A DNA stretch of 64,000 bases from Blastocystis sp. Blastoise (taxonomy: Eukaryota > Protista > Bigyra: Opalinata), in NCBI GenBank assembly GCA_039096225.1, contig JBBPEB010000033.1, forward strand, positions 1,116,001 to 1,180,000, in the 5' to 3' direction. This document shows, in pieces, positions 14,586 through 27,079 of this stretch. Numbering within the stretch: position 1 is the stretch's first letter; every line of letters starts with the position of its first letter. Both the position numbers and the translations under genes were made by a program. The notes beneath the pieces are model-generated. The model did no database searches and was not told the DNA's origin. It worked only from the letters and a program-made list of their open reading frames with translations.

Positions 14586-15849
14586 CCTCTATCCCTCTAT
14601 TCATCCCCATCTTTCTCCTCTTCTTTGGAACACTATCCCTCTTTTTATAACGGCATAAACGCTCACAATTATATATTTCATTATTCAAATAATGTATATA
14701 TATATATATGAATAATAATATAATAATGATATATATATATATAGATAGGAATATCATTAGGTATAGAAGAGAGGATATATATATATACTGCGAGTGATGC
14801 TGATTCCATGAAGGCCCGAGGGGTATCTATATGCAATGAACTTATGTATATATATATATATATATATATACATAGTATTTATGATTCTTGAATATTATAT
14901 ATATAGTTATAGTAGTGGTATTAGTGAAGTAGAATGTTCACTTCCTATTATTGATAAGGTATATATATATATTGAATTCTATTAGTATAGTATCATCACA
15001 TTATATATATATATATATATATAGTTATCTGGTATATCAATATCCTCCGTATATATGTCATTAATCACGGACTTCTTATTCCTCCTTCTCCTCTATATTG
15101 CTATTATATATATATACAGCAATATCACTCTTAATGTATATATATATATATATATACTATTAGAATATTATATATATATTATATATAACAACATATATCT
15201 TATATATATATATATTATATATAATATATATATAGTATTTAAGGAGTAAAGAGAGTATAACTGTTCAAGGACTGATTGGGGCCAATGAACATAGAGTTAG
15301 GTATATATATATATATATATTAGTATTAATACTATATATATAGATATCTAATATTCCTCCCGACAATATACGTTTCTATATTCGGAACACTATTCGGAAT
15401 ATTATTTGGAATCATATCTTTTGATTTAATATAAATTATATCTAACAACATACATATAATATATATATATATATATACCTTAATAAAGAACTCTATATCC
15501 TATCTCCTTCTGAGTCTCTTCTCTTCTTCTCTTTCTTTTCCTATTCCTTTCTCTATTGCTACATCCACTTATATATATATACTTATCCTAGGTATTGTAG
15601 CACCAATAACAGTCACTATATATATATATATAAATAGAAAGACACATACCAACGAGTCACCCAATCAAATTGTATATATATTCTACATTATTATATATTA
15701 TATTTTATATATATAAACAGGTTCATTATACAATAAAATCATCGAATTCCTCGTCATTATATACATATCTATTCCCTATTTTATTCACGATAATTCCCGC
15801 GGTTATTTACATTGGTCTTCCGTATGCCCTTATTACTATGAATATGACA

Positions 15850-18177: not shown

Positions 18178-18248
18178 TGCACCAGCCGGGAATCGAACCC
18201 GGGTCTGTTCCGTGGCAGGGAACTATCTTACCACTGGACCACTGGTGC
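18178..18248 (-). tRNA. trnG-GCC: tRNA-Gly(GCC)
   Basis: GCACCAGTGGTCCAGTGGTAAGATAGTTCCCTGCCACGGAACAGACCCGGGTTCGATTCCCGGCTGGTGCA folds as a cloverleaf; anticodon GCC; T-run downstream. Confidence 0.97.
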
Positions 18249-19975: not shown

Positions 19976-20464
19976 GTATTCCTATTATCTCTTTCAATTC
20001 ATCTTGTTGATTATTTTGGTAAATTTCATGTTTTTCTCTACTCTTTCATTTTATTATTCATCGTTTAAAAAACGAATAATGTATTTTTTTAAGTTAATCC
20101 TATTATTTAATATATATTTTTTGTTTTGTTTTTCAAACCTTATTTACTTTTGATATGATGATGAAATCAAATTTATTTCATTCATCACGTTGTGCTTATC
20201 AATGTCTTCATAAAAATACAGTCTATCGAATAGGTTCCTGTGTTGATTATGGAAAGATATACTATTCATCAACTGTAAACCTATAAAAATGAGCTTATAT
20301 ACTTTTATAGAAACTTGTAAACGCAAAATCGGCCAACAAATCGTTGTTTCCTGGAAATGATGAAACTAATTCGGAGAATGTATTCATTATTTTTATTGTT
20401 TTATATGTTCAACATAATGTTCAATAGTTTTCACAAATAAAAAAACCAAAATTAAGGCGTTTAA

Positions 20465-21418
20465 ATGGTAATCCAACTTCTGTTCCATTAAACAAATCGT
20501 TTGTGAGTCGTAGTCCTCAGAGTATAAATATATTTCAATTAGACAATGATTTAAAATCAAAATCGTCAGAAGATAATATACAAAATACTCCATTCAAAGA
20601 AGAAATATCAAATTCAACTAGCAATGAGTCACAAATAGTAATAAAAAATCCAAATGATATTCATGATAATGAGAAGACTATTAATAAAGATATACAGAAA
20701 CCACGATTAAAGCAAATATCTTCAATTTCATCAATTCTTCCTACATTAAAAAGTTCTTCAAAGAATACTGAAATAAAAAGTGAAGTTGGTCTTAATAGTG
20801 ATTTTAATGAGATTAACGATGAATTTTCGGAAAAATCAAAAAGAAAAGAATATTTACAAGTGAATTCAATTAAGAATGAAAAAGAGAATTTAGACACAAA
20901 TGGTTTTTCTTCTTCTTCTCATGAATATAAGATTGTAGATCCTCCAAAAAATGATTTATTCGATTCGAATTCTATATTATCAACGAATTCTACATATATA
21001 CCTAATGATTCTAAGAATATATATATATGTAAATTAGATATAACCCCGTGGAAAAATGCATATTTTGCTGAAGAAATAAAAAGTAATTATATAAAAACAA
21101 TTGAACATGAAGATTCACGATATAAATCTAAAAATTTATGTATATATATATTATTTTGTTTAGTATTATAACATATTTTATTTAAAATAAGTATTATTCT
21201 TATATATATTTAGAATAATTATATATATATATAGATTTAAGTACAAATCCTCTCCCTGTTCTCACTCCTCTATATTCATATCATTTTATGTACTCTCCTG
21301 TTAAGAAAGAGGGTATATTATATATATATTTAATTATTGAATATTTATACATATATTAATTATTTTAGTTATTTTAATTATATATATATATATATAGATT
21401 GGAAACCAGAGTTAATGG

Positions 21419-21454
<36 letters not shown>

Positions 21455-21969
21455 GTATCATCTCTTATATATGACTTCATTATTATCTCCTTCTTCTTCT
21501 CTTTCTTATGATTATATATATACTTCTCTTCAACGATTTAATCATCATATATATCCTTTTATTCTATTTATTCCCCACTCTATAAATATCATATATTTAT
21601 ATTATATTATATTATATTATATTATATTATATTATATTATTTTATATTATTTTATATTTTTTTTCTTATATATCTTAACTGAGCACATCTCAAACTGAAT
21701 TAAAGAACATGATAAGCACGTGCTCTGAAGAGGGTTATTTATATTCTGTAAAAATATCCTTTTAATATATATAATGTTATATTATAATATACATCTTTCT
21801 TCATACTATTATTCAGAATACATATATATATTATCCTTTATATGTTGGTACGATAAGGATACATTTCTATATCAACTCAACAAACAACCAACTTATATTC
21901 CTCTTTCGGAATATCGTAATGCACTTCGTATTTATATATCTTCATTAATCTCTCCAACATTCTCTCCTC

Positions 21970-22047
<78 letters not shown>

Positions 22048-22053
22048 TCTCAG

Positions 22054-22084
<31 letters not shown>

Positions 22085-22611
22085 TACATATAATAATACT
22101 AATAATAATACATTTTCTTCTTCTTTATCTGTGTTCCCTCTATTTCAATTACGATGTATCCTTGAGGGTCTTCAGAAGAATACTATTCCATTATATTATC
22201 TTCAAGATACAAGTAAACCTTATACTAATGATTTTTTTTCACTAGTAACATTTTTCCAAAAAATAGGTGTTTTACAGATAAAAAAGTCAGTAAATATTTC
22301 TCAGTGTCACACAATTGAAGATTTATTTAATTCGTTGATAATACTGACTCAGAAAAATATTATTGAGACTGAAAAAGATGTCGTCAAAAATATATATTCT
22401 TCTTGTATTTTGTATTACTATTTATCACTATATATATCTATATTTATAGTACGAAAGAGTTGTATTCCATTGTTCAACCATATAAAGCCTAAAGATATGG
22501 AATGGGTATGTTTAGGTCCCAATGCTACAGTAAGTTTGTCTTATTAGATTTATAATAATATATATTTTATAGATTATAGATCATGAGATCTATGAAAAAA
22601 TAGTAAACTAG
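20465..22611 (+). CDS. Uncharacterised protein (disordered N-terminus, helical C-terminal domain with poly-Asn insert); contains two AT-AC introns
   Basis: ORFs 20503-21171, 21471- and 21774-22547 join in frame via GT-AG introns and two AT-AC introns; start is inferred as an ATG-only first coding exon. Confidence 0.65.
21551..21686 (+). other. U12-type AT-AC intron (136 nt)
   Basis: Donor ATATCCTTTT, branch point TCTTAAC at 21673-21679, terminal CAC; phase 2 join is in frame. Confidence 0.9.
21754..21851 (+). other. U12-type AT-AC intron (98 nt)
   Basis: Donor ATATCCTTTT, branch-like TCCTTTAT at 21834-21841, terminal TAC; phase 0 join restores the frame into DKDTFLYQ. Confidence 0.85.
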
Positions 22612-22949
22612 TATTGTCTAAGAAAAACAATCAAATCTACTGATGACATTATCTTAAAATCTTTGTTTAGTAATGACTTCATATGTAGCCTCATGAAAGT
22701 TAGCAATGAATTTTTATAATTCTATACGTATTCACAATAATGATCATTAACAATCGATATAATGATGATGTACATATGTTTTTGTTCCTAAATCGAATAT
22801 ATCTCATTCGTTTTTAACGAATCAGAAAATGGATTTTCCCATGTGAATTTCAGGATTTTAGAGAGAAATCGAATATTTCCCCAAATGGTAATTCTTTTTT
22901 TTTTGAAAATTTTGCTTTACATATATAATCTTAAACATTGATTAAACTA

Positions 22950-24422
22950 ATGGAAGACCAAGAAAGACGTATAGACCAACAGGAGATTCGATTAACGGCA
23001 GATGATGCTGCCAGTTGCAAATATTATGCAGCAAAGCTAGGATATTTCAAAGACAACTATATAAAATATTTTATTCGTCAGGAATTAAAACGTCCTCCAC
23101 TTATTAATAGAGGATATTATTGTCGATGTGCTAGTTATGAATTTGTAATAAATAATTTTCTCTCAAAATATCAGAATGATTGTTCCATTATTAATTTAGG
23201 AGCAGGATTTGATACCTTGTATTTCCGCCTTAAGGAAAATAATAGCATGCCTTCCCAATTATTAGAATTAGATATGAAAGAAAACATTCAAAAGAAACTT
23301 CGTATAATTAATAAATATGCTGCTTTGAAGGATATGATTCCAAATTATAAAATAAATGATGATTTCAGTATTCAGACCGATCATTATTCTTTATTCCCTT
23401 GTGATTTAACGAATATTCATGAATTCGAAGAATGTTTGAAGAAGTCTACTATAGATTCACAGTATATATATAGGTTTATGATTATGTTTTATACTTGAAT
23501 TGATTGTATTATTATTTATATGATTTATATTAATATATATATTATTATTTATATAATTTATATTAATATATATATATATATATTATTTATATAAATAAAT
23601 ATATATTATTCTTTATATTAAATATATATACATATTAATATAAATTACTATATATTTACATATATATATTCTATTATAGAAAACCAGTATTGATTCTTTC
23701 TGAATGTGTTCTTATATATATCGATCCTGACTATTCAGATCCTCTAATTCAGTTTATTTCAGATCAATTCAGTCAAGCATGTTTTCTTACTTATGAACAA
23801 ATCATGCCTTCAGATGCTTTTGGAAGAACGATGGTAAAAAATTTAAATGTATATATTTATATTATTTTATATTATATTCTATTATTATAATATTATATTA
23901 CTTATATATTATTATTATATTATTTATATATTTTTTATAGCATAAATAATTATATATATTGAATAATAATTATATATATTGAATAATAATAATATATATT
24001 GAATAATAATAATATATATTGAATAATAATAATATATATAGGAACGTGGTTGTCCTTTATTAAGTTTAGAGAAATATCCGACATTAGAAGATCAAAAGAA
24101 AAGATATATTTCAAGAGGATTTACATATTGTGATAGTGAAACTATGCATAATGTATATTATAATTTACTTCCTATGAAAGATGTTCAAAGGTATATATAT
24201 TTATAATCACTTTTTAAATCATAGATATTCTTTTTTTGAGACATTTTTTTTATTTTATTATTTAGAGCTACTAGTTTAGAGTTTTTTGACGAATATGAAG
24301 AGTGGTTGTTGATTCAAACGCATTATTGTCTCACCTATGCATCAAAAATAGATAATATACAAGATATTTTCCCGATGAGACACAATGCTCTTCCGAAATT
24401 ATCTTCTATCTGGATTGATTAA
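22950..24422 (+). CDS. LCMT1: Leucine carboxyl methyltransferase 1 (PP2A methyltransferase), 4 exons
   Basis: RPPLINRGYYCR, INLGAGFDTLYFRL, SECVLIY, DAFGRTMVKNL, FDEYEEW...HYC. Confidence 0.95.
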
Positions 24423-26179: not shown

Positions 26180-27079
26180 AATGATACTATAAAATAAACA
26201 CTTGAATTATAAAAATAAAAATGATATCGTTCATGAAAGTAAAAAATAGTATGTTTCTAAGAAGATTTATGAATAGAATATCATGTTTCAAAAAAATTTC
26301 TAGATTTTTCTTAGTTTATCTATTGGATATATGTTTTATTATGTTGATTGTATCCTCTTTGAAATATTTTTAATTATTATTTTCATCGTCTTCTTGGAAA
26401 ACAAGTATTATATTATGTGAATATAAGTTATATATAAAAGTAATCCAAAATTTATGACTGACTTTTTATTTAGGATACTTTTAAAAAAATTATTTTTGCT
26501 AAATTTTTCTAATGTTACTTGAGTTACTAAAGAAAAAATTATTGTAGAAATAATGAATTAGCTGAAATACGTATGAATAAATGATAATTAAATACATAAT
26601 CATCATTTTAAATAATTTCATTTGAAAAAAGTATTTATTTCTTTGGTTAATCTATAATGTTTACGATTAGATAAGTAGAAAAGGATATTTGCAATTATTT
26701 CTTCTCGATTTCTTGTGACATTATAAATAATAGTTGTCTAAAAAATAGGATTCCTGTTTATAAAGAATTATTTTTATATTGTTCCTCAACTCATAATATG
26801 TTTCATTTAAGAATTTAGTTGTTATCAATTATAACTTGTGACATTTTGGCAATATGTTTTTTAGCTTAGATTCATAAGCATATATATTTTGTTTTCAAGA
26901 TGTTTGGATAATGAAAGAATTGATAGTGTAAAACTAACTTGTTAAATACTTTATGAAAAATGTGAGAGTCAAAGAAAAACAAAATAAAATTAACGAAACA
27001 AATAGATCTTAGCAACGCAAATGCAACTACATTGTAGAGCAATAATGAATACAAATAAAAATATATAATTCTTAATTAT

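What the first reader, a model, noticed from the sequence alone, without database searches (positions are those of the whole stretch)
21551..21851. Two consecutive AT-AC U12-type introns flanking a 67-nt exon in an uncharacterised gene
Seen: intron 21551-21686 begins ATATCCTTTT, has TCTTAAC just upstream of a terminal CAC; intron 21754-21851 begins with the identical ATATCCTTTT, has TCCTTTAT and ends TAC. Removing both joins three otherwise out-of-frame segments (NHHI-SQTELKNMISTCSEEGYLYSVK-DKDTFLYQ). Known: RTATCCTTT donors with a CCTTAAC-like branch site near the 3' end define minor-spliceosome (U11/U12) introns, which are rare, usually one per gene, and mostly in old conserved families. Inference: this organism has an active minor spliceosome, and adjacent AT-AC introns in a gene I cannot assign to any family suggest minor-intron gain. 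GT-AG-only gene finders would mis-annotate this gene.
Basis: partly seen in the sequence, partly recalled or inferred. Interest (0 to 1): 0.88.

Follow-up and report, generated by a model that had tools for sequence, protein, structure and literature searches.

The report
Two adjacent minor-spliceosome introns, Blastocystis gene
Two neighbouring stretches in an unassignable gene of a tortoise-gut Blastocystis look like real "minor-spliceosome" (AT-AC) introns, but this intron type is already known to be common in the genus, and I could not obtain RNA proof for these two.

Summary
ATATCCTTTT starts at 21551 and at 21754. A branch-like TCTTAAC or TCCTTTAT lies 7 or 10 bases before a terminal AC, at 21686 and 21851. 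Removing both stretches joins three coding segments in frame around a 67-base exon.

The genome (33.3 Mb, about 23% GC, 34 contigs) fits the published Blastocystis sp. Rus-B from a Russian tortoise. It holds U11, U12 and U6atac, and a U4atac candidate that pairs with U6atac over 12 bases. It also gives weak matches to the minor-specific 25K and 59K proteins.

Across the genome, ATATCCTTT is followed by YCTTWAY and then AC, most often 8 bases later (range 6-12). Both introns fit that range.

Intron A has no GT anywhere nearby, so an ordinary GT-AG intron is impossible there. Intron B has two weak in-frame GT-AG alternatives.

No homologue or deposited protein of the gene was found, so gain or loss of these introns cannot be judged.

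Hundreds of mostly AT-AC minor introns are published for Blastocystis, some genes with several. Other agents of this scan noted minor introns on other DNA of this genome. Verdict: probably real (about 0.8) and ordinary for this genus.

The parts
20155..20274 (+). Proposed first coding exon (starts at ATG 20155), followed by a 36-base GT-AG intron
   Evidence: Read. The open frame ends at a GTAAAC donor. Inferred, not verified by RNA.
20311..20379 (+). Proposed second exon (69 bases, phase 0 at both ends)
   Evidence: It runs from the TTATAG acceptor to a GTATTC donor. Inferred.
20428..21139 (+). Large exon (237 codons), low-complexity Ser/Asn/Lys-rich coding sequence
   Evidence: Long open frame. 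Codon log-odds are positive only in the model frame. No Pfam family.
21235..21312 (+). Exon of 78 bases between GTATAT...ATATAG introns
   Evidence: GC 0.35 against 0.06-0.08 in the flanking introns; codon score positive only in the model frame.
21398..21417 (+). Probable 20-base micro-exon, needed to keep the frame. An alternative model uses a donor at 21290.
   Evidence: Inferred; this is the least certain part of the model.
21456..21550 (+). Exon upstream of intron A (ends ...NHH plus two bases, AT)
   Evidence: codon score +0.36 in the model frame and negative in the other two.
21551..21686 (+). Intron A: 136 bases, AT-AC, phase 2. Donor ATATCCTTTT at 21551-21560; (TATTA)n run inside; branch heptamer TCTTAAC at 21673-21679; 7 bases further to the terminal AC.
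   Evidence: There is no GT between 21456 and 21700. GC is 0.125 and the codon score is negative in all three frames. The spacing lies within the genome's own 6-12 range.
21687..21753 (+). 67-base exon between the two AT-AC introns (completes the Ile codon, then SQTELKNMISTCSEEGYLYSVK)
   Evidence: GC is 0.313. Codon log-odds are +0.22 in the model frame and -0.83 and -1.54 in the others.
21754..21851 (+). Intron B: 98 bases, AT-AC, phase 0. Donor ATATCCTTTT at 21754-21763; branch-like TCCTTTAT at 21834-21841; 10 bases further to the terminal AC.
   Evidence: Found by the genome-wide gapped pattern. GC is 0.173 and the codon score is negative in all frames. In-frame GT-AG alternatives exist at 21748-21857 and 21734-21816.
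21852..22382 (+). Exon after intron B, containing an (AAT)n poly-Asn tract (about 21967-22080). The 3' end of the gene was not resolved.
   Evidence: Open frame 21774-22547. Codon score is positive only in the model frame. No homologue found.

Best explanation
Both stretches are U12-type (minor-spliceosome) AT-AC introns of a single-copy gene that cannot be assigned to any family. The genome is most likely Blastocystis sp. Rus-B from a Russian tortoise.

Inferred mechanism:
- U11 pairs its AAAGG with the CCTTT of the ATATCCTTTT donor.
- U12 pairs its GUAAGGAA with the TCTTAAC or TCCTTTAT branch site.
- The 3' cut falls at the first AC 6-12 bases downstream, at 21686 and 21851.
- The 67-base exon is therefore bounded on both sides by minor-type signals.

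Shown here: the sequence anatomy, restoration of the frame, the coding contrast between exons and introns, the snRNA genes, and a genome-wide class of introns with the same signals.

Inferred, not shown: actual splicing at these exact ends.
For: - Exact motifs and frames.
- No GT at all between 21456 and 21700, so junction A cannot be GT-AG. Keeping either intron in the message leads to a stop codon.
- Codon-usage log-odds are positive only in the model frame for exons 1, 2, 4, 5 and 6, and negative in all frames for both introns. GC is 0.31 in the 67-base exon against 0.125 and 0.173 in the introns.
- These are the only two composite donor + branch + AC + open-frame sites in the window, against 0.13 expected.
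- Genome-wide, ATATCCTTTTA occurs 327 times against 103 for the reversed control. Donor + YCTTWAY + AC occurs 87 times against 39.
- Over 74 such loci the heptamer-to-AC spacing peaks sharply at 8 bases. In 23 unambiguous cases it ranges from 6 to 12 and the ends are mostly TAC or CAC. Intron A has spacing 7 and ends CAC; intron B has spacing 10 and ends TAC.
- snRNAs: U11 62.9 bits, U6atac 63.8 bits, and U12 46.8 bits with an intact branch-recognition box. The U4atac candidate forms a 12-base perfect duplex with U6atac; 0 of 2000 shuffles reach that length.
- The 25K-type Ubiquitin_4 domain scores over the Pfam cut-off and PDCD7/59K just under it.
- Literature: minor introns and the full minor machinery are published for Blastocystis ST1 and ST7 (PMC5608401; PMC10639083).
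Against: - There is no RNA evidence.
- The donor 9-mer alone is at chance level in this AT-rich window. Many genomic copies of the 11-mer lie inside coding sequence, reading as Tyr-Pro-Phe.
- Intron B has two in-frame GT-AG alternatives, and its branch site is the rarer TTTAT variant.
- Intron A has an in-frame AG three bases before the AC.
- The slid-acceptor control for open-frame joining was weak: 40 of 74 loci join at the predicted ends, against 23-31 when the acceptor is slid.
- The gene has no homologue, so no protein alignment confirms the junctions.
- The U6atac candidate differs from the consensus in the box that pairs with the 5' splice site.
Confidence: 0.8

Rival explanations
1. 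Intron B is an ordinary major (GT-AG) intron, either 21748-21857 or 21734-21816, and the ATATCCTTTT inside or beside it is a chance match. Only intron A would then be of the minor type.
For: Both GT-AG pairs keep the frame open. The donor 9-mer occurs at chance frequency in the window. Intron B's branch site is the minority variant.
Against: - The alternative ends are GTAAAA...GATAAG and GTTATT...ATTCAG. The three upstream GT-AG introns of this gene, and most clean candidates in the window, use GTATAT...TATAG.
- My own estimate is that a perfect 10-base minor donor at a codon boundary, plus a branch heptamer and an AC at an allowed spacing that also restores the frame, would arise by chance in well under 1% of introns. 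This is an estimate, not a computed result.
- The composite pattern is enriched genome-wide.
Confidence: 0.1
2. Intron A is of the minor type but ends at the AG at 21683 (an AT-AG intron). That would add one codon, giving ...NHH-I-T-S-Q....
For: The AG at 21682-21683 is in frame with the same donor.
Against: It lies only 4 bases after the branch heptamer. In the genome's own unambiguous AT-AC set the spacing is 6-12 bases with a mode of 8. The AC at 21686 has a spacing of 7.
Confidence: 0.06
3. The segment is not spliced as modelled. Possible forms: the gene is decayed or silent; the 67-base piece is skipped as part of one long intron (21551 to 21851 or 21856); or the TA-rich stretch is read through as coding sequence with a small GC-AG intron at 21683-21716.
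For: There is no RNA evidence and no homologue. The frame of exon 4 stays open through all of intron A up to 21698. An AT-AA join from 21551 to 21856 is in frame.
Against: - The 67-base piece has exon-like GC content and a positive codon score only in the frame the model predicts. Both introns score as non-coding in every frame.
- By my own calculation from base composition, open frames of 222 and 257 codons at 23% GC are far beyond chance.
- Skipping to the AC at 21851 breaks the frame.
Confidence: 0.04

Closest known systems
U12-type AT-AC introns of Blastocystis ST1 and ST7 (Gentekaki et al. 2017, PMC5608401; Larue and Roy 2023, PMC10639083)
   Same: Same genus by inference. The AT-AC subtype dominates (77% in ST1). 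Phase 0 is common: 49% in ST1, and 8 of 18 in my sample from this genome. Several genes carry more than one (346 introns in 319 genes). The positions are poorly conserved.
   Different: ST1 minor introns are very short (median 39 bases), while these are 98 and 136 bases and very AT-rich. That fits the longer introns reported for the tortoise strains (PMC12129017). The tortoise-strain paper does not mention minor introns at all: the terms AT-AC and 'minor splic' both occur 0 times in it.
Canonical metazoan and plant U12-type AT-AC introns (donor ATATCCTTT, branch TCCTTAAC, 3' site about 10-15 bases after the branch point; from established knowledge)
   Same: The donor 9-mer is identical. The branch site has the same core. 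The terminal dinucleotide is AC. There is no need for a polypyrimidine tract.
   Different: The genome's own branch consensus is YCTTAAT rather than TCCTTAAC. In human, U12 introns are rare, and I know of no standard example of two consecutive ones flanking one small exon. The host gene here is not an old conserved family member.
Other minor-intron reports of this scan on the same genome (notes s1-723207, s1-726003, s1-726016, s1-727417)
   Same: Same genome and the same AT-AC anatomy. Some are reported with several minor introns in one gene.
   Different: Those lie on other DNA. I did not re-test them. According to the notes, some had homologues or RNA support, which this locus lacks.

Membership tests
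U12-type (minor-spliceosome) intron, AT-AC subtype | 5' splice site matching ATATCCTTT from the first intron base | tested here: met
   ATATCCTTTT at 21551 and at 21754.
U12-type (minor-spliceosome) intron, AT-AC subtype | Branch-site motif of the TCCTTAAC type close to the 3' end | tested here: met
   Intron A has TCTTAAC 7 bases before its end. Intron B has TCCTTTAT 10 bases before its end. The genome's own AT-AC set has YCTTAAT/C at 6-12 bases, with a mode of 8. Intron B carries the rarer TTTAT variant.
U12-type (minor-spliceosome) intron, AT-AC subtype | Terminal AC, and removal that restores one open reading frame | tested here: met
   The introns end with CAC at 21686 and TAC at 21851. 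The frame is continuous across both joins and the codon score supports the 67-base exon.
U12-type (minor-spliceosome) intron, AT-AC subtype | U11, U12, U4atac and U6atac present in the same genome | tested here: met
   U11 scores 62.9 bits and U6atac 63.8 bits, both over their thresholds. U12 scores 46.8 bits against a threshold of 53 but keeps an intact 5' end and GUAAGGAA box. U4atac scores only 29.7 bits but has a K-turn, an Sm site and a 12-base duplex with U6atac.
U12-type (minor-spliceosome) intron, AT-AC subtype | Minor-spliceosome-specific proteins (20K, 25K, 31K, 35K, 48K, 59K, 65K) encoded in the genome | tested here: inconclusive
   Only two were sought. The Ubiquitin_4 domain (25K type) scores 24.2 bits against a cut-off of 22.8. 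PDCD7 (59K) scores 25.3 bits against a cut-off of 27. Both are single-exon fragments.
U12-type (minor-spliceosome) intron, AT-AC subtype | Removal from the transcript at exactly these ends | not testable with these tools
No transcript-derived or deposited protein of the gene was found in the protein collections.
U12-type (minor-spliceosome) intron, AT-AC subtype | Dependence on the minor spliceosome (lost when U12 or U6atac is inactivated) | not testable with these tools
   This needs an experiment.
   No relative of any exon was found: Pfam, the word-indexed protein search, 1.84 billion representative proteins, ESM Atlas, the organism's own genome, and JGI metagenomes.

The most novel reading that the evidence does not exclude
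The two adjacent AT-AC introns were created recently in a young, lineage-specific gene of the tortoise Blastocystis clade. This genome would then be a live case of ongoing minor-intron birth, with an exon defined on both sides only by minor-spliceosome signals.
Probability: 0.15. Interest if true: 0.6.

Novelty: new member of a known kind. Interest (0 to 1): 0.25.

Why it matters
In most eukaryotes minor introns are few and ancient. Blastocystis is one of the few lineages with hundreds of them and rapid turnover. A tortoise strain with long, AT-rich introns shows the signals with unusual clarity: donor ATATCCTTT, branch YCTTAAT, and AC about 8 bases later.

This particular pair adds one more example, including a small exon flanked on both sides by minor introns. 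It also gives a practical warning that gene models for this genome must allow AT-AC junctions.

It does not by itself bear on how minor introns arise, because the gene has no detectable relatives.

Tried and rejected
They were only part of whole-window statistics inside local scripts.
- Gene identity. Nothing came from Pfam on the exons, three word-indexed protein searches, ESM Atlas or a JGI metagenome scan. The search of 1.84 billion representatives gave only poly-Asn matches, and the best of them was rejected by BLASTP and Pfam. The gene is single-copy in its own genome.
- Structure. A single-sequence fold of the C-terminal 97 residues had a mean pLDDT of 55.9, too poor to use for a fold search.
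- Duplication or an introner-like origin of the two introns. They share only TA-rich low-complexity similarity with each other and with other loci.
- Checking AT-AC splicing by homology in other loci. Flanking pieces of four ATATCCTTTTA sites gave only weak Pfam hints; the best was NT5C at E = 0.04 in L041.
- The other ATATCCTTT sites in the window, at 26680 and 50550 on the minus strand, do not look like intron starts.
- Joined model. Exons were searched one by one, by reference. Junction frames were tested only on short flanks inside scripts.

Full report
**What is there**

The window is about 23% GC. At 21551 and again at 21754 the + strand reads ATATCCTTTT.

- The first stretch runs 136 bases. 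It contains a (TATTA)n run, then TCTTAAC at 21673-21679, and ends TGAGCAC at 21686.
- The second runs 98 bases. It has TCCTTTAT at 21834-21841 and ends ATGTTGGTAC at 21851.
- Between them lie 67 bases (21687-21753).

Taking both stretches out joins ...NHH, a split Ile codon, SQTELKNMISTCSEEGYLYSVK and DKDTFLYQ... in one frame. Intron A is in phase 2 and intron B in phase 0.

**Gene model**

From I read a + strand gene that starts at ATG 20155.

- Exons: 20155-20274, 20311-20379, 20428-21139, 21235-21312, a 20-base micro-exon at 21398-21417, 21456-21550, 21687-21753, and 21852 onward. The 3' end is unresolved.
- The five upstream introns are GT-AG. The three nearest use GTATAT...ATATAG.
- A codon-usage score was trained on 15 other long open frames of the window. 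It is positive only in the model frame for every exon tested, including the 67-base exon (+0.22 against -0.83 and -1.54). It is negative in all three frames for both candidate introns.
- GC is 0.31 in the small exon against 0.125 and 0.173 in the introns.

**Is it more than chance?**

- The donor 9-mer alone is not enriched: 4 matches in the window against 3.05 expected.
- The composite is. Requiring ATATCCTT, then a YCTTWAY heptamer within 300 bases, then an AC 2-14 bases later, and an open frame of 20 codons on each side leaves exactly these two sites in the window. The mean of 300 composition-matched resamples is 0.13, and 3 of the 300 reach two.

**Alternatives at the junctions**

- Junction A: there is no GT at all between 21456 and 21700, so no GT-AG intron can bridge it. 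The only major-type option is a 34-base GC-AG intron that would make the whole TA-rich stretch coding.
- Junction A also has an AG at 21683 that is in frame, but it lies only 4 bases after the branch heptamer.
- Junction B: two in-frame GT-AG options exist, 21748-21857 (GTAAAA...GATAAG) and 21734-21816 (GTTATT...ATTCAG). Both are poor matches to the GTATAT...TATAG pattern of this gene and of most clean candidates in the window.
- Keeping either intron in the message leads to a stop codon.

**The organism and its machinery**

Notes from earlier agents of this scan named a tortoise-gut Blastocystis. The assembly is 33,340,088 bases in 34 contigs at about 23% GC. That fits Blastocystis sp. Rus-B in Table 1 of PMC12129017: 33 scaffolds, 33.3 Mb, 23.1% GC, with introns longer than in human strains. 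This is a match of statistics, not a sequence identification.

| Component | Place in the genome | Score | Note |
|---|---|---|---|
| U11 | C4:1684165-1684293 | 62.9 bits | 5' end AUAAAGGGC; its AAAGG complements the donor's CCTTT |
| U6atac | C21:544821-544937 | 63.8 bits | over the threshold |
| U12 | C24:844725-844868 | 46.8 bits (threshold 53) | near-perfect 5' end, GUAAGGAA branch-recognition box at 18-25 |
| U4atac | C8:151033-151167 | 29.7 bits | K-turn-like loop, Sm site, 12-base perfect duplex with U6atac positions 37-48; no shuffle of 2000 reaches that length |
| 25K-type Ubiquitin_4 domain | C4:1778883-1779005 | 24.2 bits (cut-off 22.8) | single-exon fragment |
| PDCD7 / 59K | C32:644530-644640 | 25.3 bits (cut-off 27) | single-exon fragment |

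**A genome-wide class with the same signals**

- ATATCCTTTTA occurs 327 times against 103 for the reversed control. Many copies are plainly coding, reading as Tyr-Pro-Phe.
- The pattern ATATCCTTT, 55-85 bases, YCTTWAY, 2-14 bases, AC occurs 87 times against 39. Intron B is among the hits.
- I fetched all 74 other loci. The spacing between the heptamer and the AC peaks sharply at 8 bases: 22 combinations, against 2-8 at every other spacing.
- In 23 unambiguous cases with low-GC introns and richer flanks:
  - the heptamer is CCTTAAT or TCTTAAT in 20;
  - the spacing is 6-12;
  - the ends are TAC (14), CAC (4), AAC (3) and GAC (2);
  - the phases are 8, 7 and 3 for phases 0, 1 and 2.
- Intron A (TCTTAAC, spacing 7, CAC) and intron B (CCTTTAT, spacing 10, TAC) both fall inside this class. 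Intron B carries the rarer branch variant.
- The AG alternative for intron A (spacing 4) falls outside it.
- One control was weak: open-frame joining at the predicted ends (40 of 74) is only modestly above the same test with slid acceptors (23-31).

**What could not be done**

There is therefore no RNA evidence for these junctions.
- The gene has no detectable relative, deposited model or transcript-derived protein in anything I could search. It has no paralogue in its own genome.
- A fold of its C-terminal part was too poor to use.

**Comparison with what is known**

- Gentekaki et al. 2017 report 346 U12-type introns in 319 genes of Blastocystis ST1, with all four snRNAs and all seven specific proteins, and the same components in ST7.
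- Larue and Roy 2023 count 253 in ST1. Of these, 77% are AT-AC and 49% are in phase 0, the median length is 39 bases, and turnover within the genus is rapid. They raise recent gain as a possibility.
- Minor introns, including several per gene and in non-conserved positions, are therefore a known feature of the genus.
- The paper on the tortoise strains does not mention them, so they are undescribed for this strain.
- Other agents of this scan have noted AT-AC introns on other DNA of this genome. I did not re-test those notes.

**Verdict**

The reading as two U12-type AT-AC introns is probably right: about 0.9 for intron A, about 0.8 for intron B, and 0.8 for the pair as modelled. The claims of rarity and of intron gain are not supported, or cannot be tested here. 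This is a new member of a known kind and of modest interest.

Noticed in passing
L002:1501-1617 (-) = G000:C21:544821-544937: The U6atac candidate reads GAGCCGAGAGAAGG where the Rfam consensus has GAAAGGAGAGAAGG. From established knowledge, that stretch holds the GG that pairs with the CC of the 5' splice site. How this U6atac recognises ATATCCTTT donors is unexplained.
   Followed up: partly
L047:1501-1635 (-) = G000:C8:151033-151167: The U4atac candidate is far below Rfam's threshold (29.7 against 53 bits). It is supported by a 12-base perfect duplex with U6atac, involving changes on both partners relative to the Rfam consensus.
   Followed up: yes
window 15414-15491 (+): A third probable AT-AC intron has a variant donor, ATATCTTTT. 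It is followed by CCTTAAT and an AC 7 bases later, which fits the genome's own spacing rule.
   Followed up: partly
G000, e.g. C3:90087-90107, C5:60900-60920, C8:1176707-1176727, C13:914362-914382: The 10-base unit ATATCCTTTT occurs as short tandem repeats at several loci, with hits exactly 10 bases apart. The minor-donor sequence is therefore also a microsatellite unit in this genome.
   Followed up: no
L076/L077 (C13:1254110 and C14:1269854); L067/L091 (C5:24400 and C20:744839); L116/L117 (C33:1229979 and C33:1245420): These are pairs of near-identical AT-AC candidate introns with the same flanks on different contigs or in inverted orientation. They are probably recent gene or segment duplicates that carry minor introns.
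   Followed up: no
window 21967-22080 (+) and 21598-21640 (+): There is a long (AAT)n tract coding poly-Asn inside the last large exon, and a (TATTA)n microsatellite inside intron A. The poly-Asn tract caused all the spurious matches in the protein search.
   Followed up: partly
window 22938-23498 (+) and 18178-18248 (-): The neighbours of the gene are a leucine carboxyl methyltransferase gene (Pfam LCM, E = 3e-13) downstream and a tRNA gene (63.9 bits) upstream.
   Followed up: no
I did not examine or search them further.
   Followed up: no
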